Shown piece after piece: positions 28,727 to 43,158 of a stretch of DNA of 64,000 nucleotides (the stretch's first letter is position 1; every line of letters starts with the position of its first letter). The notes beneath the pieces are model-generated. The model did not search any database. It was not told where the DNA came from and was given only the letters and a program-made list of their open reading frames with translations. The stretch is from IMG/VR virus record IMGVR_UViG_3300024239_000013, positions 124,001 to 188,000 of that record; one strand, 5' to 3'. The translations under genes and the position numbers were made by a program.

Positions 28727-31048
28727 TTAAATTAATTTCTCTTTTTTGATCCTGTCAATTACCTGTTTAGCTGATATTTTCTTGGTGCATTCAAATTCTC
28801 TTGCCGTCCCTTTATATAAAGGACACCACATCCAATCGCCTTTATCGAACGTATATTTGTTGGGTTGATTGAAACAAGAATTACAAACATCCTCCCGATG
28901 AATCCTAATGCAATTATGTGTAAATTCATTATCTTTAGAAGTAACCCCCGATATCATAACAACCTTCTTACCTAACCCGTGGGCAAGCCAAGAAAGTCCA
29001 CTGGATAGCCCTATAAAGAATTCGCAATTTTCAATAATAGCTATCATTTCATCTAGATCTCCTCCTGTCATATCCACACAGTTTCTAGGTATCGGGTTCC
29101 AATTTTCAGGAGTACCAAAGGAGCTGTACCTATCAATGCAAACTGGTATAAGTTTATTCTTTCTTAATTCTTCACAAAGTTTAAACCAAGCTTCGTTATT
29201 ATTCCAATGTTTAGCCTGTGCAGTACTGTGCATAGAGAAACAAATGTATTTACCTTTAATTTTTCTTTCTTTTACATAAGATTTCTTTATAATTGGAGAT
29301 ATCTCACTGTATTCTAAGAGAAGTTGATCAGAAAACCCTTTCTGTAAAGGAACATCAAATAGATATTCTAGACTTATGTAATTAGTGTACTTTGCCGATT
29401 CTGTGTTATCTACAAAATTTATGTTGGAATAAATACCATCAAAAAGATAGCTGAACTCACAAAAAACATCAACAATAATATTATGTTTTAACCCATATTC
29501 GTTAGCATAAGGAACAAATGCAATATTATCACCTAGAGACCTTGAAGTTAATTTAATCAATGTTCTTTCTGGTATTCTTATTTTTTCCTCATAATAGTCT
29601 TCAATCTGACCAATATTAAATTGACAATAGAAAAAATCTTCTGATTTATCTCCTAAATAGAAAAATCCAGAAATACAAGTATCTAGAGTAATTATAGACC
29701 CGGTTTCCTTTGAGAATATTTCCAGAAGATTCTTATGTGATGAATTAGCTCCCTTAATAATTATATGTCGATTTCTTATGTCCATAGATTCCCTATAGAT
29801 AATTTTAGCCCCCTCCTTAACAACTATTTCCCAATCGACATATCTATTTGGATCTGTTTTTGAATATATCCAGGATCTAGAGTCAGTAGGCATTTCTGAT
29901 TTTGTTATGATTTCTCCCGTTAATTTATCTATAAAGGAAACTGATGTGCCTGGTTTAGTTATTCTTGATTTATGTAAGAAAGGTACAGATTTAAACCAGG
30001 AATAAATGCCGGAATTCCCACTTTTATTATTCTCAATTTTCTTAGTAGATGTATAACTATCCATAAGAATTTTACCTTGATCTATTCCCAGGTAACTGGT
30101 ATATTCCATTAACATTCTAGAAACAATTACTTCCCATGAAATTAGATTTCTATATTCTTGACACTCCATTACATATGAGGGATATCTTTTAATAACATCG
30201 GATATACCATCGGCTAGCTCAGTATGATCAACCATAAGAGATTCAGAGAGACTAATCTTTTTAGTTCCTGGTAATTCTTCCTCGCACGTACCAACAACAG
30301 GGACTCCTTTTGCTATAGATTCTGTTACTGTTAGGTTTGGATGACCTGCCTCTAACATAGACGGATTTAAAAATATTTCATGTTTATTCATTTCCTCCAG
30401 TACATCTTCATACGGTAGATCGTAAATAATTTTTAATTTATCGTATGGTTCTATAGAAGAAAGGAGTTCTTTATTTCCCTTACTTGGACAGATTATAGTT
30501 ATCGGTAAATCTAAAGATCTAGCTGCATCAATACCAGGTAAAAATCCTTTCCTATCATACATAGGATTTCCACCAAGTCCATTGTTTGCCATCATTAAAA
30601 GTCTAAAATCTCCATTATTTACTTTTTCTGATCTATCTAAAAATGAATAGTCCTTTATATTTACTCCATGCTCCAGATATCTAAGATTTTTTGGTGATCC
30701 GAAATAATCAACAAGATATTTAGCATGAACGAATGAAAGCTGTGATCCCTCTATTGCCTCCATATTTTGCTTATAAACGTCCGAATTCTTTCCGAAATGG
30801 TATGCATGGTGATCGTGGTGAGAGAAGACGTATGGTATTCCTCTTTCTTTTAAAATGAGAGCAAGATTAGCCATATGAACATGCACCACATCCCATTCTC
30901 CTTTTACTACTTCATCTGTATATAGAATCTCGACATCATGGCCAAGGTCTCTCAAAACCTTTGTGTATTCCCATATTACTTTTTCCACCGCACCCCATCC
31001 ATCAGTGGGGATTGGTATATTACCTGGTGTTATTTGGGCTATTCTCAT
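28727..31048 (-). CDS. GT4 glycosyltransferase fused to a TibC/AAH-like protein O-heptosyltransferase domain
   Basis: N-terminal GWGAVEK/PS..E..(GT4); C-terminal SLGD, IGLSSGLSWLA, VVMISG and the Cys cluster CNSC..WCP..EC. Confidence 0.75.
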   Translation of the reverse strand: MRIAQITPGNIPIPTDGWGAVEKVIWEYTKVLRDLGHDVEILYTDEVVKGEWDVVHVHMANLALILKERGIPYVFSHHDHHAYHFGKNSDVYKQNMEAIEGSQLSFVHAKYLVDYFGSPKNLRYLEHGVNIKDYSFLDRSEKVNNGDFRLLMMANNGLGGNPMYDRKGFLPGIDAARSLDLPITIICPSKGNKELLSSIEPYDKLKIIYDLPYEDVLEEMNKHEIFLNPSMLEAGHPNLTVTESIAKGVPVVGTCEEELPGTKKISLSESLMVDHTELADGISDVIKRYPSYVMECQEYRNLISWEVIVSRMLMEYTSYLGIDQGKILMDSYTSTKKIENNKSGNSGIYSWFKSVPFLHKSRITKPGTSVSFIDKLTGEIITKSEMPTDSRSWIYSKTDPNRYVDWEIVVKEGAKIIYRESMDIRNRHIIIKGANSSHKNLLEIFSKETGSIITLDTCISGFFYLGDKSEDFFYCQFNIGQIEDYYEEKIRIPERTLIKLTSRSLGDNIAFVPYANEYGLKHNIIVDVFCEFSYLFDGIYSNINFVDNTESAKYTNYISLEYLFDVPLQKGFSDQLLLEYSEISPIIKKSYVKERKIKGKYICFSMHSTAQAKHWNNNEAWFKLCEELRKNKLIPVCIDRYSSFGTPENWNPIPRNCVDMTGGDLDEMIAIIENCEFFIGLSSGLSWLAHGLGKKVVMISGVTSKDNEFTHNCIRIHREDVCNSCFNQPNKYTFDKGDWMWCPLYKGTAREFECTKKISAKQVIDRIKKEKLI

Positions 31049-31052
31049 TTTT

Positions 31053-33002
31053 TTAGTCTATTCTGGTTGCAAAAATTGTACCTCTATCATTATTCTCATT
31101 GGCTGTGTATCTAGTATCATCGTCTCTAATATCGACAGTGAATCCTGCTTCTACGATTTTTCTAATAAGCTGAGTCGCTCTACCTTCATTATTATGAAAT
31201 TCAATTAGTAGATTTTTGAACCTTCTTAGATCTTCAGTTGTGACCGTGCTAAACATTTGGTATTCAGCTCCCTCTATGTCAACTTTTAGGAGATCAGCCC
31301 CTTGTATATTATATTTTTCCAGCAGATCCATGAGAGTTATGGTTTCTACCATCTGTCTTTCGCTATAACCTTCTCCGGTTCCCTCTATACTAGAGATTAA
31401 ACTGTTTTCTGGATTCACAAGCATCTCTATAAATTCCCCTGATTTATCAGAAAGTGCATATTTTGCTAATTTAACATTAGTATTATTTCTATGAATAGCA
31501 TGGAATGCCTTTGCTGCAGTTTCGTTAGGTTCAACTGCGATCACCTCAGTATCTCTACCAAATCTATCAAGAACCCATTCAGTAAAAAGACCAACATTAG
31601 CACCAATATCGATAGCTGTTTTTATTCTCTGTCCGGCAAAGAATAAATTATAAACACCGTCTACAAAGAACTGCGTATAATTCACAAAAACTGGATCGAA
31701 GTTCATATAAGGGTTGCTTGGTAATTTTTTCTTATTAATCCTTTTTTTAATAACATATTCCTCAAATATTAGAGGAATTTCATCACCTCTATTACTATAA
31801 ATTTCAATCCCAAATCCACTAAAGTTTTTATCTCCGTAAAAATCATAGAATTCTTTTGGGATCGGAACGCACCAAAAACTTTGTCCTGGTTCAATTTCTT
31901 GCATTTTAAATCCGTATATACATGCGTTAGAATCTATATCTTTAATAGAAACCCAAAAATTTCCTTTAATGCTATATAAAGGTCTAATGTCGATTTGATT
32001 ATTTTCTGGATTAAAGTTTATTTCTAATTCCTTTGATTTATTTCCCGTAGAATTCATTTTTATAGTATTTCTTATTAAACTTATATTTTCTTCTCTTGTC
32101 GGTTTCATAAATATTACGCTATCTGATTCCTGATACATACCAACATAAACCGGAAGATCCCTCATTATCAAAGGGGTCCCGATATTTATGGTTTCTCTTA
32201 TTACAAGTGGACTTGTTTCTTTATCGTTAAATAGTGCTATTGACGGAAATATAACAGCATCGCATGCTTTATAGAACAAATCAACTTCATCTCTTTCCCC
32301 CCAAATCCTACAGTTATTTGGTTTATTGTTAATTATGGGTTCCCAGTACCATTTATAATTTTCTGCTAATGTCCCGACGAAATGAAAATCAACATCCGGT
32401 AAATCCCTTGCTAAATCAAAAGTTTCTATCTGATTTTTTCTCGGGGTAAATATACCAACTTGAACTATATGCTTTCTTTTTGGATCTAATCCAAGAATTC
32501 TAATACATTCTTCTTTTGAAGGAATCTCTTTTTTATCGATTTGATTCTCGATAACCTCCATAGGAACACCAAGATCGCTAAATAAATTTACTTGCCATGG
32601 ACTAACCACAAGAAATTTATCAGGGAGGTATCTTTTTTCTTTTGGATTGATGGAAGAATCATGAAACGTTTCAAATATTTTATAATCCCTATCTTTGGAG
32701 TATATTTTATCTAGTAAAAAATCATCTACAAATTGTTCACAGGGTTCTTCGAAGTGTATTATATCGGGATTAATTCCAAAAAGCCTATCTAACAAAAGTT
32801 CGGTTTTTTTATCACCCCAAGTTATTATACGTTCTTCACCTATTTGCTTCTCTATTCTGAGTCTTACTGTATTATAAACACTCTCTTTGGATTTTTCGAA
32901 AATCCAAATATCAGCAACATTCTTTAGTTTTTCTATTTTATTTCTTAAATATTCTGGCATTCCACCAGTGGAAAGATGTGGTACTATATAAGCTATTCTC
33001 AC
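31053..33002 (-). CDS. GT4 glycosyltransferase fused to a FkbM-family methyltransferase
   Basis: PHLSTGGMP, VG.F.PRKNQ; DIGANVG, EPN, KVDIEGAE and EFH. Confidence 0.85.
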   Translation of the reverse strand: MRIAYIVPHLSTGGMPEYLRNKIEKLKNVADIWIFEKSKESVYNTVRLRIEKQIGEERIITWGDKKTELLLDRLFGINPDIIHFEEPCEQFVDDFLLDKIYSKDRDYKIFETFHDSSINPKEKRYLPDKFLVVSPWQVNLFSDLGVPMEVIENQIDKKEIPSKEECIRILGLDPKRKHIVQVGIFTPRKNQIETFDLARDLPDVDFHFVGTLAENYKWYWEPIINNKPNNCRIWGERDEVDLFYKACDAVIFPSIALFNDKETSPLVIRETINIGTPLIMRDLPVYVGMYQESDSVIFMKPTREENISLIRNTIKMNSTGNKSKELEINFNPENNQIDIRPLYSIKGNFWVSIKDIDSNACIYGFKMQEIEPGQSFWCVPIPKEFYDFYGDKNFSGFGIEIYSNRGDEIPLIFEEYVIKKRINKKKLPSNPYMNFDPVFVNYTQFFVDGVYNLFFAGQRIKTAIDIGANVGLFTEWVLDRFGRDTEVIAVEPNETAAKAFHAIHRNNTNVKLAKYALSDKSGEFIEMLVNPENSLISSIEGTGEGYSERQMVETITLMDLLEKYNIQGADLLKVDIEGAEYQMFSTVTTEDLRRFKNLLIEFHNNEGRATQLIRKIVEAGFTVDIRDDDTRYTANENNDRGTIFATRID

Positions 33003-33058
33003 TTCAGTTACTTTTAATGTGGATTATAGTAGATAAAATAGATTTAATTTCGTAAATT

Positions 33059-34044
33059 GTATTGAAAAGGTGCCTTTTATACAAAATTAAATTATACTAT
33101 AGACTGTCCACAATTAGGACAGAATTTCCAACTTTTCTTTTTCATTCTGGTTCCACATTTTGTGCAGTATGATCTGATTTCGGAAACTTCCATAGGTTTA
33201 GCTGATTTTGGCAGAATCTTATATTCTGATGAATATGCCCAAATTGTTGAATATGTTCCATGATCCCTTCCGAAAGATTGTTCGGATTTTTCACCTTTCT
33301 CTATCCTACCGGTTTCAATTAAATCCGGATTGACTAAATTATTGGTAGTTGAATATGTAAAATCAGATAAATTTGAGCTTATTGAGTTCGTTGACGAATA
33401 ATAAGAAATGTTTGTTGTTTTAGTGGAATCACCTAGATTGGTTTTTCCGATTACACTACCGGAAGAGTCTGAAGTCACCAGATTTACAAGATTTCCGATG
33501 TATGTACCGTTCCAACTATTATGTGGTACGTATGTTGGAAACGGAAGTGAGAAATGGTTCATAAAGACCTCCGGATAAAACTCAACTTTAATATTGCCAT
33601 TATTTTCAATGGCTTTCTTAACTTCTTCGGAGGAATCCACATCATATGTAGAAAAAAGAAGTTTTTTGTTCTCGTCTATGTGTCTATCTAAGAAATATCT
33701 CTGTCCTGGTTTAATAACTAAACCCGACTTACTGATCAAATTTCCATTCAAATAAATTTTTGCTAAATATGAAATTTGTGTTGGGTTGAAGAGCTCTATT
33801 TGAAACTCCTGTCCATCTTCAAGATAAACTACATCATCGTCTGATCCGTAGATCTTTTGTCTGTTGTTGGATATTGCTACCCAAGCTTCTGGATTTTGCT
33901 GCAGAATATTACTACACAGCACTTTGTTTTTGTTTTTCATTTTATTTACCTTTTTTTTAAAATCTCTTCGTTACTCATTTAAATGAATAACTCAAAGGCC
34001 TTTATTGGCCCGAGACAATAAGTATGAAAGGCACCTTTCAATAC
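33059..34044. repeat. Pair of about 24-bp palindromic inverted repeats (33059-33082 and 34022-34044) enclosing one gene
   Basis: GTATTGAAAAGGTGCCTTTTATAC versus reverse complement GTATTGAAAGGTGCCTTTCATAC. Confidence 0.8.
33092..33940 (-). CDS. Hypothetical phage protein with C-terminal double zinc ribbon
   Basis: IELFNPT, ETGRIEKG and CTKCG...FCPNCG. Confidence 0.75.
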   Translation of the reverse strand: MKNKNKVLCSNILQQNPEAWVAISNNRQKIYGSDDDVVYLEDGQEFQIELFNPTQISYLAKIYLNGNLISKSGLVIKPGQRYFLDRHIDENKKLLFSTYDVDSSEEVKKAIENNGNIKVEFYPEVFMNHFSLPFPTYVPHNSWNGTYIGNLVNLVTSDSSGSVIGKTNLGDSTKTTNISYYSSTNSISSNLSDFTYSTTNNLVNPDLIETGRIEKGEKSEQSFGRDHGTYSTIWAYSSEYKILPKSAKPMEVSEIRSYCTKCGTRMKKKSWKFCPNCGQSIV

Positions 34045-34069
34045 GAATTTTAATATATATATTTATAGT

Positions 34070-34513
34070 CTAATAATCTTCTCTAAAATCTCTATCATCA
34101 TAAGAAGGATAGTCATCATCGTCCCACTCATCCTCATCTAAGAATCCTCTTTCATGATAGTTTATAAGCGATTCCCAAGAATCCCCATCTTTAAACCAAA
34201 CATAAGCCGCGCTAGGAGGTAATTCTGTAACCCATTCAATTTTAGAATCATTTTCCCAACCTTCAGGAATAAGTTCATCTAAGATTTCTATAAAGTTCTT
34301 AACGTCAGATAAAACGTCAGATTCAAATGGGTAATCCTCTATATAAATTTCAAGATGACCTGAAAAATTTATTTCAGCATACTTTGAAAATAATTCACAA
34401 AAAATAAGAAAGTCGTCATTTAGCTCTACTGAATTTTTGAATTCTTCTAGATCACTTTTATCGAACTTTTTATTTGATGTTAATTCTACATTTAAAAAAT
34501 AATCCGTTTTCAT
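34070..34513 (-). CDS. Acidic hypothetical protein
   Basis: 147 aa ORF; GGTATATA upstream. Confidence 0.6.
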   Translation of the reverse strand: MKTDYFLNVELTSNKKFDKSDLEEFKNSVELNDDFLIFCELFSKYAEINFSGHLEIYIEDYPFESDVLSDVKNFIEILDELIPEGWENDSKIEWVTELPPSAAYVWFKDGDSWESLINYHERGFLDEDEWDDDDYPSYDDRDFREDY

Positions 34514-35329: not shown

Positions 35330-35933
35330 TTATATAAAATTTTGACAAAATGATTTTCTGTGATATTTAGTAATTCCTATTTCTTTTATAGCTTTAATGT
35401 GATCTGCAGTACCATATCCAACATTTCTAATCCATAAATAATTTGGAAATTCCGAATCTAGATTTTGCATTAACTGATCCCTATGGACCTTAGCAAGAAT
35501 AGAAGCTGCAGAGATTTGTAATATTTTGGAATCACCCTTTACTACACATTCATATGGAATGTTATTGTGGCCTATAAATCTGTCACCATCAACATAAAGG
35601 AAATCTGGGGTTTTTGAACATGCATCTATAGCTCTTTTCATAGCTAAGTAAGTTGCTTGTAAAATGTTAATCTGATCTATCTCCAGAGGAGAACTAGCTC
35701 CAATTCCCCAAGATATTGCATTTTCTTTAATGACATTAGCTATCTCTTCCCTTTTTTTTGCGCTTTTGATAGATTTACTATCTTTTATTCTAGGATCTGA
35801 AAATCCCTCAGGTAATATCACAGCTGCTGCAACAACCGGTCCTGCTAGACATCCTCTGCCTTCAGCCCACCTCGTCCACGCCAGCAATAAATTTCAGCTC
35901 GCGAAGAAGAGGTGGATTATTTTTTTCTATCAT
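35330..35933 (-). CDS. rnhB: Ribonuclease HII interrupted by a 7-nt insertion (recoded gene or pseudogene)
   Basis: ATG 35933 gives MIEKNNPPLLRELKFIAGVDEVG*; GRGCLAGPVV, DSK, VDG, KGD, SAASILAKV.RD and HRKSF follow in another frame. Removing 7 nt gives a 198-aa intact protein. Confidence 0.88.
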
Positions 35934-36060: not shown

Positions 36061-37638
36061 TTATTTGAGTTTTATTGTGGTGTATTCACCTTTAATAAAG
36101 TTTATATGTTGAGCCTTACCGTCATGATGTATTATAACATGAGACTGCAACCACCCGCTAGGGCCTAGGTTATAGTTAACCCTCAATTTAGTGGATGTTC
36201 CTACAGCTAAAGCTCCATCTTTTCTTCCTGGGCAGTGATAATGACCAACTACTATCTTGGTATTTAGTTTTCTGAATTGTAATAACGAACCTCTCGATCC
36301 ATTTGATCCAATATCTCCATGTTGACCTAATTCCCATCCATTAACAACAAAACTATCACTCCTACCTAAGGTTCTGAATTCTGGATATCTTTGATTGATT
36401 AGATATGGAATAACCCCATTTGGCGCTTCTCCTTTCAGTATCAAAGAACTATATTCCATGTATTCTATAGAATTTTTTAGTGTTGGCGCTTTTCTCCAAT
36501 CGGTTCCCTTTAACCATCGGTCTAGAAAATCGTCATGATTACTTCTAACTATGGTAACATTATACTCAGAAAATTTACCCAATCCATCTAGCATAGAATC
36601 TATTTCACCTTTTAGTGAATTAGTTCCATCCATTTCCCTTTGAAATTGTACAAACGGGTCTTTTATCTCGTGATGATTTATAGAAAGACCGTCAAAAACA
36701 TCATGGAGGACTATATTATCTGGTTTTATTATCTTGAACATGTCAAGAGTTTTTTGAATGACCCTATCGTCATGTTGTCCGTAGTGGAGATCTCCTAATA
36801 TAGCTGCTGATATGCTTTCGTTTTGACTTATAACATTTTTTCCCAAATCGGGATCATATTTTACATTATAATATAAATCATTAAAATCCCCATCGTCAGT
36901 TGCTGTTACCTGTCTAGCAAAAAATGTCGAAGAATCTTTTATTTCTACAATCACAAATCCTAGAGTATGATGAAATTCTCCTTTTTTTCCAGATTTAGAA
37001 TCCGTATAATTTTTAACCGTACATGCTCCAGTTGTCATCATCATCTTGGGTAGATTTCCCTCCAATACTGGTATAGTTTCTAAATGTACCTTAGGAGATC
37101 CAAAAACACAAGAATTAATTCCGCTCATACCTTGAAGTCCTGTCATTGGATCTACTGCTGTAGGCTGTATCTTAACATCCGACATGATCCACATATGTTT
37201 ATGTACTTCATGTCTATTAGCATCCAGATATTCTTCTATTCTAGGAGACCAGGTATCATAGTTCTTGTCAGTAAAAACTGATGTTGGATTCTTATATCTA
37301 CCAGCTATAATATGGATATCTGCATTTATAAAATTAGCATAAGCTTCTATATTAGAAATGAAGGTCTCGTGTACAGGTGTATCATTTTGTGCCCAAGTGA
37401 TTATAAATTTCTTCTTCTTCTTATTGAATTTTCTTTCTCTGGCTTTTATTAATTGTGGGGATTCTTGGATGGCTTTTTCAGTTATGCCTAGTTTAGAGAT
37501 CCAGCTTTGGACAGTTCTTTCGGATTTACCTAGATATTGGCTTAGCTGTTTCATTCTCTCGTCCCAGCTTAGTTTTCTATTCCAATAAATCCCAGAAAGG
37601 TCCGAAATATTTTCTGGAGTTAAGTCTGAAAACTTCAT
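36061..37638 (-). CDS. HTH plus metallophosphoesterase-fold protein (T5 A1-like)
   Basis: N-terminal HTH (SERTVQSW); IITWAQN; GDLH, SNHD, HGD.GSNGSRG and GHYH. Confidence 0.6.
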   Translation of the reverse strand: MKFSDLTPENISDLSGIYWNRKLSWDERMKQLSQYLGKSERTVQSWISKLGITEKAIQESPQLIKARERKFNKKKKKFIITWAQNDTPVHETFISNIEAYANFINADIHIIAGRYKNPTSVFTDKNYDTWSPRIEEYLDANRHEVHKHMWIMSDVKIQPTAVDPMTGLQGMSGINSCVFGSPKVHLETIPVLEGNLPKMMMTTGACTVKNYTDSKSGKKGEFHHTLGFVIVEIKDSSTFFARQVTATDDGDFNDLYYNVKYDPDLGKNVISQNESISAAILGDLHYGQHDDRVIQKTLDMFKIIKPDNIVLHDVFDGLSINHHEIKDPFVQFQREMDGTNSLKGEIDSMLDGLGKFSEYNVTIVRSNHDDFLDRWLKGTDWRKAPTLKNSIEYMEYSSLILKGEAPNGVIPYLINQRYPEFRTLGRSDSFVVNGWELGQHGDIGSNGSRGSLLQFRKLNTKIVVGHYHCPGRKDGALAVGTSTKLRVNYNLGPSGWLQSHVIIHHDGKAQHINFIKGEYTTIKLK

Positions 37639-42631: not shown

Positions 42632-42685
42632 TTCTATACTTTAGTTTAGATTATATATCCAAACTAAAGTACGAAATCGCGTCAG

Positions 42686-43158
42686 TGGAGACGGAGGGAA
42701 TCGAACCCTCGTCTTGATCAAATGTCCAATGGAATCATTCACAGGCTTAGATAATTTTTCTAAATTAACAAAATATGAAGTTTGATGTACGTGGGAAACA
42801 AAACTTCCAAAAAACCTGGTCGGCAACTAGTTATTTTATACAGGTCTGCCCCTGCCACCCGCACTCTTTCGCCCCCTGTATAGATCGACTACGATCAGAT
42901 GCTCAAGGTCAGCCTTGACTATTAAGGGAGCCATCTGGATTTTATTTTTCGTTTTTCTGTTTCTAGGTAAACGAATAACCACATGCTTAAGCAGCTACTG
43001 TGTAACTTACTTTAGAACTAGGAGTACCAAACGAGTTGATTACATCCCAAACATTTTTTTCGCCATTTAAAGCTTGTATAGGTTATTATAGAGTTTCCGA
43101 TACTAACTCTGCCTGCATCTCAAAGAACTGAATCTGTCAATCGAAACCGATCGTCCCC
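42686..43158 (-). ncRNA. ssrA: tmRNA, about 473 nt; tag GEKNVWDVINSFGTPSSKVSYTVAA at 42987-43064
   Basis: 5' GGGGACG pairs with 3' CGTCTCC-A including G3:U70; T-arm GAGGGTTCGATTCCCTC; tag ends AA-stop; CCA is not encoded. Confidence 0.93.

What the first reader, a model, noticed from the sequence alone, without database searches (positions are those of the whole stretch)
33059..34063. Gene bracketed by palindromic inverted repeats, with a hammerhead-like three-way junction in its 5' UTR
Seen: two about 24-bp sites, each palindromic around a TG/CA core, sit in inverted orientation just downstream of a TATATA element and just after the stop codon. The 5' UTR (34015-33963) reads TCTC-G-[GGCC aataaa GGCC]-TTTGA-[GTTATTCAT ttaa ATGAGTAAC]-GAA-GAGA. 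This has type III hammerhead topology with the GA/GAA pairs, but lacks the canonical CUGANGA core and the UH cleavage site. Inference: possible mRNA end-to-end pairing or processing, an autoregulatory RNA element, or recombinase/operator sites defining a cassette.
Basis: partly seen in the sequence, partly recalled or inferred. Interest (0 to 1): 0.62.

Follow-up and report, generated by a model that had tools for sequence, protein, structure and literature searches.

The report
Phage mRNA that pairs its ends
The two "inverted repeats" are the two strands of an RNA helix that ties the start of one phage messenger RNA to its tail, next to a new conserved three-way RNA junction (not a hammerhead); together they probably allow translation only when the whole message is present.

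Summary

Comparison with 121 homologous loci from viral and metagenome contigs shows two conserved RNA elements on the sense strand:
- **Three-way junction.** It sits in the 5' leader of this one gene family and is a motif absent from Rfam. The junction letters U-N-G-A and R-A-W hold in 97 of 97 distinct sequences, and every helix pair shows compensatory changes. A covariance model hits once per genome.
- **Long-range helix P0.** It pairs the first roughly 15-30 nt of the mRNA with the 3' UTR just after the stop codon. More than 20 unrelated arm sequences exist, and each matches its own partner. The helix appears in the minimum-energy fold of 21 of 21 full-length mRNAs. Its mismatches favour G-U over A-C.

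The palindromy of each site is seen only in part of the family, including the window's own clade.

It is not a hammerhead: the CUGANGA core and the cleavage nucleotide are missing. It is not an invertible or mobile cassette: orientation is the same in all 41 neighbour comparisons and synteny is kept.

The 5' arm is also complementary to the translation start region, and this co-varies (p=5e-5). I infer a three-partner switch in which the 3' arm frees the start site. That step is not demonstrated.

The parts
34052..34067 (-). Promoter-like box TATAAATATATATATT. It belongs to the phage-wide (G)ATATATA(A) motif.
   Evidence: In this genome 83 genes have a TATATA box within 60 nt of their ATG, mostly 10-40 nt away. 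Here the box lies about 115 nt upstream of the ATG, so the leader is unusually long. A related box sits upstream of the 5' arm in most homologous loci. No sigma-70 consensus is found on this strand. The transcription start is inferred, not mapped.
34022..34050 (-). 5' arm, the 5' strand of long-range helix P0. It is also an alternative partner (anti-start-site) of the translation initiation region.
33954..34024 (-). Three-way junction of the leader. P1 pairs 34016-34012 with 33966-33962 and has an outer extension. P2 is the hairpin 34011-33996. J2/3 is UUGA at 33995-33992. P3 is the hairpin 33991-33970. J3/1 is GAA at 33969-33967.
   Evidence: It is the MFE fold. Covariation is shown. Covariance model R1 scores 73.5 bits here and has no other hit in the genome. 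The junction letters are invariant.
33938..33961 (-). A-rich spacer, AAGGTAAA and the ATG: the translation initiation region. It can pair with the UGCCUUU segment of the 5' arm.
33092..33940 (-). ORF of 282 aa. It has an Ig-like beta-sandwich (residues 17-125), a disordered S/T/N-rich linker, a beta-hairpin carrying the ETGRIEKG motif, and a C-terminal zinc ribbon. The family is found only in viruses and its function is unknown.
33054..33082 (-). 3' arm, the 3' strand of helix P0. It starts 10 nt after the stop codon.
33031..33092 (-). Local 3' stem (33092-33080 pairing with 33054-33042) that encloses the 3' arm, followed by the U-rich CTATTTTATCT. This is the probable end of the transcript, and it is an alternative fold to P0.
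   Evidence: (I6). Distant relatives carry a clean intrinsic terminator 3-10 nt after the 3' arm. The simple terminator scan finds none here.

Best explanation
**What it is.** The region is one monocistronic transcription unit of an uncultivated jumbo phage. It runs promoter box, 5' arm, three-way junction, A-rich start region, 282-aa ORF, 3' arm, terminator. The two repeats are not DNA sites. They are the two strands of an RNA helix (P0) that joins the first nucleotides of the mRNA to its 3' UTR across about 950 nt.

Directly beside the 5' strand, the leader folds into a conserved three-way junction with invariant U-N-G-A and R-A-W linkers. This is compatible with tandem sheared G-A pairs, as in a k-junction. 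It is not a ribozyme core.

**How it probably works.** The 5' arm has a second, weaker partner, which is the translation start region.
1. While only the 5' part of the mRNA exists, or after the 3' end has been lost, the 5' arm can mask the start site.
2. Once the 3' arm is made, its longer complementarity captures the 5' arm and frees the start site.
3. Translation is thereby licensed on complete mRNAs, and the paired ends should also shield the mRNA from end-dependent nucleases.

The junction may be the docking site of a protein, possibly the encoded zinc-ribbon protein.

**Shown and inferred.** Shown: the junction, P0, its sense-strand RNA nature, and the co-varying complementarity between the 5' arm and the start region. 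Inferred: the direction of the switch, the stabilising effect, and any protein binding.
For: **Junction**
- On the hand alignment, 91% of cells are paired and 18 of 21 pairs show compensatory change. 0 of 500 shuffles reach this, and slid controls give 37-54%.
- On 67 independent metagenome sequences, 95.9% are paired and 21 of 21 pairs are compensatory.
- The model hits once in the window and in each of 36 viral loci, including L022 and L039, which were not in the seed. It hits 70 of 79 metagenome loci.
- It hits once in the own genome and gives one significant hit in each of five other phage records (195-430 kb).
- Junction letters U, G, A and A are invariant in 97 of 97 distinct sequences.
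- Many conserved G-U pairs show that the folded strand is the sense strand.

**Helix P0**
- Cognate duplexes are -20 to -38 kcal/mol, against about -5 to -15 between different arm types, in 17 of 19 arm types.
- The cognate mean is -25.5 against a permuted mean of -11.1 +/- 1.1, p=5e-5.
- About 55 of 66 further loci have it, with new arm sequences.
- It is present in the MFE of 21 of 21 full-length mRNAs.
- Mismatches are G-U type in 23 contexts and A-C type in 7, p=0.005.
- In distant clades an intrinsic terminator follows the 3' arm.

**Switch**
- The 5' arm against its own start region averages -6.8 against -4.9 +/- 0.4 permuted, p=5e-5 at three clustering levels. Three ORF control segments show no effect, p=0.13-0.87.
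- The modelled unpaired probability of the start region rises from 0.56 to 0.71 with the cognate 3' UTR. A scrambled 3' UTR leaves it at 0.56. Wilcoxon p=1e-5, n=27.
- L039 has no 3' arm and also has no arm-like sequence in its leader; it has a plain AGGAGG site.
Against: - No RNA ends, structure probing or expression data exist.
- The only read data are assembled contigs. One contig from an RNA library crosses the box and the 5' arm (34006-34229), so read-through from the upstream gene, or DNA carry-over, cannot be excluded.
- The pairing between the 5' arm and the start region is short (5-7 bp, about -7 kcal/mol).
- A model-free test, the longest shared word between the start region and the 3' arm, is not significant (p=0.18).
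- In the window's own clade each arm is a near-palindrome and can fold on itself, so P0 competes with two local hairpins.
- L024/L025 and L039 keep the junction but lack a 3' arm, so P0 is not indispensable.
- After collapsing related contexts by eye (not computed), the G-U versus A-C count is about 17 to 6.
- The function of the protein is unknown.
Confidence: 0.6

Rival explanations
1. P0 is mainly an RNase III-type processing stalk. The 5' and 3' flanks pair as they do around rRNA, and the duplex is cut. This excises or matures the mRNA from longer precursors, or triggers its decay as in icaR.
For: P0 is 14-30 bp and lies next to P1, so the two could give about two helical turns. In L028, L042 and L043 the 5' arm follows a tRNA gene and its terminator hairpin, with no TATATA box. 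In L043 the complementarity reaches about 30 bp. A contig from an RNA library crosses the 5' arm, which would fit read-through precursors.
Against: No cleavage data exist. This reading does not explain why the start region co-varies with the 5' arm. It is compatible with the best explanation rather than exclusive of it.
Confidence: 0.2
2. The junction, with or without P0, is the operator for autogenous control. The zinc-ribbon protein binds its own leader and represses or stabilises its mRNA, as T4 gp32, gp43 and RegA or ribosomal proteins do. The end pairing would be secondary.
For: The motif is single-copy and strictly linked to this gene family over 36-100% protein identity. The junction letters are invariant while the helices vary. 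The protein ends in a basic zinc ribbon.
Against: Nothing shows that the protein binds RNA. Its fold is a generic beta-sandwich, best Z 6. RNA cannot be tested with the complex predictor. This reading does not explain the 3' arm.
Confidence: 0.12
3. The repeats are DNA sites: inverted repeats for a recombinase (an invertible or mobile cassette), or paired operators for a dimeric DNA-binding protein.
For: In the window's clade each site is a 23-24-bp near-palindrome with an asymmetric TG/CA centre. The pair is unique in the genome.
Against: - The gene has the same orientation as its upstream neighbour in 29 of 29 loci and as its downstream neighbour in 12 of 12.
- Synteny is kept.
- No recombinase domain was found in the seven neighbouring proteins scanned.
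- No inversion joint appears in the contigs (weak evidence).
- Arms in many clades are not palindromic yet are always inverted.
- The two copies differ by bulges.
- Mismatches are biased towards G-U on the sense strand.
Confidence: 0.03
4. The leader is a self-cleaving ribozyme (a hammerhead variant) or a small-molecule riboswitch.
For: It has a three-helix topology with G-A-rich linkers and absolutely conserved junction nucleotides.
Against: - The linker is 4 nt (U-N-G-A), not CUGANGA.
- No nucleotide lies between P1 and P2 where the hammerhead cleavage site would be.
- The first letter of the GAA-like linker is A in 51 of 97 sequences.
- No Rfam ribozyme or riboswitch model matches at E<=10.
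- Only four positions are invariant, which is few for a ligand pocket.
- The gene is not metabolic.
Confidence: 0.03

Closest known systems
hok mRNA fold-back inhibition (fbi) in the hok/sok system of plasmid R1
   Same: The 5' end of an mRNA pairs with its 3' end. Whether the 3' partner is present decides which alternative fold the 5' region takes, and so whether the start site is open.
   Different: In hok the end pairing keeps the mRNA inert, and 3' trimming activates it. Here the inferred logic is the reverse. There is no antisense RNA, no small toxin ORF and no overlapping reading frame. An extra conserved three-way junction is present.
icaR mRNA 5'/3'-UTR pairing in Staphylococcus aureus (PMC3868564)
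   Same: A 3' UTR segment of a bacterial mRNA pairs with its own 5' UTR and changes translation. The duplex is a possible RNase III substrate.
   Different: In icaR the 3' UTR pairs with the Shine-Dalgarno region and represses. Here the 3' arm pairs with the 5'-terminal arm, which is itself the element complementary to the start region. icaR is one species-level case. This one is conserved with compensatory change across more than 100 phage loci.
hbs mRNA 5'/3'-UTR interaction in Bacillus subtilis (PMC5737220)
   Same: A 14-bp long-range helix between the UTRs of a short monocistronic mRNA modulates nuclease access and couples stability to translation.
   Different: In hbs the helix overlaps an RNase Y site, and no alternative pairing with the start site is described. 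The present helix reaches up to about 30 bp and lies at the extreme 5' end.
k-junction RNAs: TPP riboswitch junctions and the DUF-3268 motif (PMC10573300, PMC4005666)
   Same: It is a three-way junction in which one strand carries a short loop followed by G-A, and the opposite strand carries (G/A)-A next to the same helix. The third helix sits on the non-bulged strand. [quoted passage not shown]
   Different: The open helix here would be the T helix, not the C helix as in the DUF-3268 crystal construct, so this is a permuted order. Only two free loop nucleotides plus a wobble pair precede G-A. One extra nucleotide follows the conserved A. No Rfam model matches, DUF3268 included. The 3D fold is untested.
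Type III hammerhead ribozyme
   Same: The order is open helix, hairpin, purine-rich linker, hairpin, GAA-like linker, open helix.
   Different: It lacks three of the seven core nucleotides and the cleavage nucleotide, and it has no Rfam match. It is not a member.

Membership tests
Hammerhead ribozyme (type III) | Three helices around a central core, with helix III open | tested here: met
   The MFE fold and the consensus structure give an open P1 and the hairpins P2 and P3.
Hammerhead ribozyme (type III) | Conserved CUGANGA between helices I and II | tested here: not met
   The linker is 4 nt, U-N-G-A, in 97 of 97 distinct sequences.
Hammerhead ribozyme (type III) | Cleavage nucleotide H17 between helices III and I | tested here: not met
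   P1 and P2 occupy adjacent alignment columns with no linker. In the window the only candidate is a G that pairs with U.
Hammerhead ribozyme (type III) | Match to the Rfam hammerhead covariance models | tested here: not met
   No hammerhead hit at E<=10 in the window region or in two relatives.
k-junction | Tandem G-A / A-G next to one helix: G1b-A2b on the bulged strand and (G)2n-A1n on the other strand | tested here: inconclusive
   The sequence is compatible. G and A of J2/3 and the A of J3/1 are invariant, and position 2n is G or A. The pairing geometry cannot be tested.
k-junction | Loop L1-L3 before G-A, third helix directly after A1n, and a kinked 3D fold | not testable with these tools
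   Two free nucleotides plus a closing G-U precede G-A, and one extra nucleotide (A or U) follows the conserved A. FRET or crystallography is needed, as in PMC10573300.
DUF3268 RNA and other Rfam families | Score against the family's covariance model | tested here: not met
   cmscan against all 4227 families found nothing at the leader or the arms at gathering score. At E<=10 only chance-level hits of 11-19 bits appeared.
5'/3'-UTR pairing of bacterial mRNAs (icaR, hbs, hok type) | Complementary segments in the 5' and 3' UTR of one transcript, conserved between relatives | tested here: met
5'/3'-UTR pairing of bacterial mRNAs (icaR, hbs, hok type) | Both segments lie on one RNA molecule, and the pairing changes expression or decay | not testable with these tools
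   Only assembled contigs of RNA libraries were available, and they show no ends.
Invertible DNA segment or mobile cassette | Both orientations or varying locations occur, with a recombinase nearby | tested here: not met
   Orientation is the same in 29 of 29 and 12 of 12 loci. Synteny is kept. No recombinase domain was found in the seven neighbouring proteins scanned.
Intrinsic terminator hairpins | G+C-rich hairpin followed by a U tract at the end of a gene | tested here: inconclusive
   The scan finds none on the - strand here. The 3' arm lies inside a long A+U-rich stem followed by a U-rich tail. The 5' site lies downstream of the promoter box. Distant clades have a separate, clean terminator after a non-palindromic 3' arm.

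The most novel reading that the evidence does not exclude
This would be a prokaryotic counterpart of the eukaryotic closed loop: an mRNA integrity checkpoint written entirely in RNA. The extreme 5' end masks the start site until the 3' UTR, transcribed last and lost first in 3'-to-5' decay, captures it. Only complete messages of this gene would then be translated. A k-junction-like three-way junction would set the geometry or recruit the encoded zinc-ribbon protein for feedback.
Probability: 0.35. Interest if true: 0.85.

Novelty: new variant of a known kind. Interest (0 to 1): 0.72.

Why it matters
Pairing between the two ends of a bacterial or phage mRNA is known from only a handful of single-species cases (icaR, hbs, hok). 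Here the same principle is backed by natural compensatory changes in more than 100 loci and more than 20 unrelated arm sequences. As far as I know that is unusually strong comparative support for a helix spanning a whole coding region.

The finding gives three things:
- a new, well-defined RNA motif, absent from Rfam, with a covariance model ready for use;
- a candidate new k-junction;
- a testable three-partner design (5' arm, start region, 3' arm) that could show how phages tie translation to mRNA completeness, and that could be reused in synthetic mRNA design.

It also marks an uncharacterised protein family, found only in viruses and conserved in many huge phages, as tightly regulated and therefore worth studying.

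Tried and rejected
- **Rfam.** The whole window at gathering score gives only a tmRNA elsewhere. Permissive scans of the region and of two relatives give nothing relevant.
- **Hammerhead.** Rejected on the core and on the cleavage site.
- **Genome-wide repeated regulatory motif, like promoter-stem-loop cassettes.** Rejected, because the core occurs only at these two places in 319 kb.
- **Protein function.** Pfam gives only the zinc ribbon, PHROGs only unknown families, Foldseek against the PDB nothing at E<=0.001, and VIA-align only a generic Ig-like sandwich at Z<=6. The Atlas shows clusters of viral hypothetical proteins only.
- **Reads.** All runs are stored as contigs. Fragments of the ORF occur in three metatranscriptome runs from two studies. 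No joints and no ends are visible, and nothing covers the 3' arm or the junction. This is uninformative for processing and only weakly against inversion.
- **Longest shared word between the start region and the 3' arm.** Not significant, p=0.18.
- **Simple sigma-70 and terminator scan.** It finds nothing on the gene's strand.
- **Bulk catalogue of candidate structured RNAs from IMG/VR (PMC10690425).** Its supplementary files are not held. I cannot say whether the junction is among its unnamed entries.
- **Long-range anti-SD idea.** UUUUACC after the 3' arm could pair with GGUAAAA. This was seen by eye in one subclade and, more weakly, in the window's own group. It is not conserved, so it was dropped.

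Full report
**Setting**

The window is bases 124001-188000 of a 319,334-bp IMG/VR virus record that CheckV rates complete. It is A+T-rich (about 32% G+C), and 370 of 416 called genes lie on the - strand. Its closest DNA matches are Flavobacterium and Cellulophaga phages, through the T5 A1-like gene. A Bacteroidota host is therefore likely but not shown. Near-identical DNA occurs in subsurface, wastewater, freshwater and river metagenomes.

**Check of the observation**

Read on the - strand, the region runs in this order:
- The upstream gene stops at 34072-34070.
- A TATA-rich box lies at 34067-34052.
- The first site lies at 34044-34022.
- The leader follows, and the ATG is at 33940.
- The 282-aa ORF runs to the TAA at 33094-33092.
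- The second site lies at 33082-33059.

The two sites are reverse complements apart from one single-base bulge on each strand (or one bulge and one C-A mismatch, depending on the alignment). Each is a near-palindrome around TG/CA. The core pattern is over-represented: 3 matches against 0.30 expected, and 0 of 100 shuffles reach that. It occurs nowhere else in the genome.

The three-way junction is the minimum-energy structure of the 59-nt piece (z = -4.29) and also of the 129-nt leader (z = -2.9).

**The gene**

The product has these parts:
- a well-conserved N-terminal domain, modelled as an Ig-like beta-sandwich with pLDDT above 90;
- a disordered S/T/N-rich linker of variable length;
- a beta-hairpin carrying ETGRIEKG, which packs on the sandwich;
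- a basic C-terminal zinc ribbon (PF13240).

Structure searches give only generic sandwiches. Foldseek finds nothing at E<=0.001, and VIA-align gives Z<=6. The family has more than 735 members in metagenomes, on contigs up to 430 kb. Where taxonomy is known, 96-100% of members are viral. The function is unknown.

**Related loci**

I fetched 42 loci from IMG/VR and 79 more from metagenome contigs. Protein identity to the window's product runs from 36 to 63%.

In 29 of the 42 viral loci the upstream 147-aa gene is homologous, and in 12 the downstream glycosyltransferase is. The orientation is always the same. The gene is therefore a stable resident. In distant clades the neighbours differ: tRNA genes upstream in L028, L042 and L043, and an HNH endonuclease gene in L029 and L032. 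The RNA elements still travel with the gene.

**The three-way junction**

Nearly every leader folds into the same shape on its own.
- With a hand-drawn structure on a MAFFT alignment, 91.2% of cells are paired and 18 of 21 pairs show changes on both sides. No shuffle out of 500 reaches this, and sliding the partners drops pairing to 37-54%.
- Covariance model R1 finds exactly one hit in the window and in each of 36 viral loci, always on the sense strand just upstream of the gene. This includes L022 and L039, which were not in the seed.
- R1 hits once in the 319-kb genome. It gives one significant hit in each of five other phage records (195-430 kb).
- R1 hits 70 of the 79 metagenome loci.
- On those independent sequences, 95.9% of cells are paired and 21 of 21 pairs have compensatory changes. 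This alignment is fitted to the model, which favours it.
- The linkers are fixed. J2/3 is U-N-G-A and J3/1 is R-A-W, with U, G, A and A invariant in all 97 distinct sequences.
- Several positions are conserved G-U or U-G pairs. These would be C-A on the other strand, so the folded molecule is the sense RNA.

No Rfam family matches. The hammerhead core and its cleavage nucleotide are absent. The pattern is what a k-junction would need: a short loop followed by G-A on one strand, R-A on the other strand next to the same helix, and the third helix on the non-bulged strand (PMC10573300, PMC4005666). The helix order is permuted and the loop lengths differ, so I call it k-junction-like and untested.

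**The long-range helix P0**

Across the family the two flanking sites change completely, yet they stay complementary to each other. Examples are GTGAAACACCGATAA in L034, TTGAAACCTTGTTG in L037, TAGAGCCTGAC in L033 and CTGGGGAGCC in L096.
- Cognate duplex energies are -20 to -38 kcal/mol. Duplexes between different arm types are about -5 to -15. This holds for 17 of 19 arm types.
- A permutation test on 18 representatives gives -25.5 against -11.1 +/- 1.1, p=5e-5.
- About 55 of 66 testable metagenome loci have the helix.
- When whole mRNAs of 850-1040 nt are folded, the helix between the first 36 and the last 48 nt is part of the MFE structure in 21 of 21 cases, with 10-27 pairs.
- The arms are individually palindromic in the window's clade and some relatives but not in others, so palindromy is not the conserved feature.
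- The 5' arm ends within a few nucleotides of the outer P1 helix. The 3' arm starts 1-16 nt after the stop codon.
- In distant clades the 3' arm is followed after 3-10 nt by a clean intrinsic terminator.

An RNA-blind alignment of one arm with the reverse complement of the other gives transition mismatches that would be G-U in the sense RNA in 23 distinct contexts. It gives A-C in 7 contexts (p=0.005). After collapsing related contexts by eye (not computed) the count is about 17 to 6. Together with the constant orientation of the gene, this rules out an invertible segment. It also makes DNA operators unlikely.

Two lineages (L024/L025 and L039) have lost the 3' arm because the next gene follows at once. 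They keep the junction.

**Promoter**

(G)ATATATA(A) is a general upstream motif of this phage. 83 genes have a TATATA box within 60 nt of their ATG, mostly 10-40 nt away, and some only 5-13 nt away. The target gene has its box about 115 nt upstream, so the 5' arm should begin at or near the transcript's first nucleotide. This is inferred and has not been mapped. One contig from an RNA library crosses the box and the arm, so some read-through, or DNA carry-over, is possible.

**A third partner**

The 5' arm is also complementary, over 5-7 bp, to the sequence at or just before the start codon. That sequence changes between clades in step with the arm:

| Start region | 5' arm segment |
|---|---|
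| AAGGUA | UGCCUU |
| GCACUAU | GUGGUGC |
| CAGGU | GCCUG |
| CCAGA | UCUGG |
| AAUCUUU | AGAGGUU |

- Cognate pairs are more stable than permuted pairs: -6.8 against -4.9 +/- 0.4, p=5e-5, at three clustering thresholds.
- Three control segments inside the ORF show no such effect, p=0.13-0.87.
- In a two-strand partition-function model, the start region is unpaired with probability 0.56 in the 5' part alone. This rises to 0.71 when the cognate 3' UTR is added and stays at 0.56 with a scrambled one (n=27, Wilcoxon p=1e-5). For the window the values are 0.44, 0.84 and 0.37.
- A model-free shared-word test was not significant (p=0.18), and the helix is short. I therefore treat this layer as moderately supported.

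**Mechanism proposed**

The 5' arm acts as an anti-start-site element, and the 3' arm acts as its stronger decoy. During synthesis, or after 3'-to-5' decay has removed the tail, the 5' arm can mask the start site. Once the 3' arm exists, it captures the 5' arm and the start site opens. The paired ends should also hide the 5' end from end-dependent nucleases, and they place the stop codon close to the start region in space.

The invariant junction probably fixes the geometry or binds a protein. The encoded zinc-ribbon protein is the obvious candidate, because the motif is single-copy and specific to this gene.

An RNase III role for P0 is compatible with this. It would suit the clades in which the gene follows tRNA genes without a promoter box. 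All of these functional steps are inferences.

**Comparison and novelty**

End-to-end pairing of bacterial mRNAs is known from icaR (PMC3868564), hbs (PMC5737220) and hok (my own knowledge). This case shares the principle but differs in several ways:
- its wiring, because the 3' arm binds the 5' end and not the ribosome site;
- the attached junction;
- its occurrence in phages;
- the depth of its comparative support.

The junction is a new motif with respect to Rfam 15. A bulk catalogue of IMG/VR candidate RNAs exists (PMC10690425), but its files could not be searched.

No alternative genetic code was used. No toxin, effector, or animal or plant virus sequence was involved.

Noticed in passing
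window 42683-43158 (-): A phage-encoded tmRNA. It matches Rfam RF00023 at 78.8 bits (gathering score 47) and E=6e-29 over the full model, and it is 476 nt long. ARAGORN did not report it. This may be relevant, because the proposed switch would also limit translation of truncated messages.
   Followed up: no
whole genome G000, for example genome positions 48970, 53200, 62526, 76768 and 82818: The (G)ATATATA(A) box lies only 5-13 nt before the ATG of several genes, which suggests leaderless or near-leaderless mRNAs. 83 genes have the box within 60 nt of their ATG.
   Followed up: partly
L028, L042 and L043, upstream of the homologous gene: In these relatives the 5' arm follows directly on a tRNA gene and a terminator-like hairpin, with no TATATA box. 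In L029 and L032 the upstream ORF carries an HNH-endonuclease-like motif, recognised by eye and not scanned.
   Followed up: no
window 35330-35887 (-) and 36061-37638 (-): Two genes lie a few genes upstream of the target: an RNase HII gene (PF01351, E=1e-33) and a T5 A1-like 'DNA transfer protein' (phrog_1745, E=1e-145).
   Followed up: no
window 28727-33002 (-): Two large multi-domain glycosyltransferase genes lie directly downstream. One combines GT1 with an FkbM methyltransferase domain, and the other combines GT4/GT1 with a GT9 domain.
   Followed up: no
L024 and L025 (leader): These loci have lost the 3' arm but keep a palindromic 5' hairpin of changed sequence (GTATTAGG...CCCTTATAC). In that clade the local 5' hairpin may therefore have a role of its own.
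   Followed up: partly
window 33269-33286 and 33596-33613 (+): Two terminator-like hairpins with T tracts lie on the antisense strand inside the ORF, against 0.5 expected from shuffles. They may be chance, or they may stop antisense transcription.
   Followed up: no
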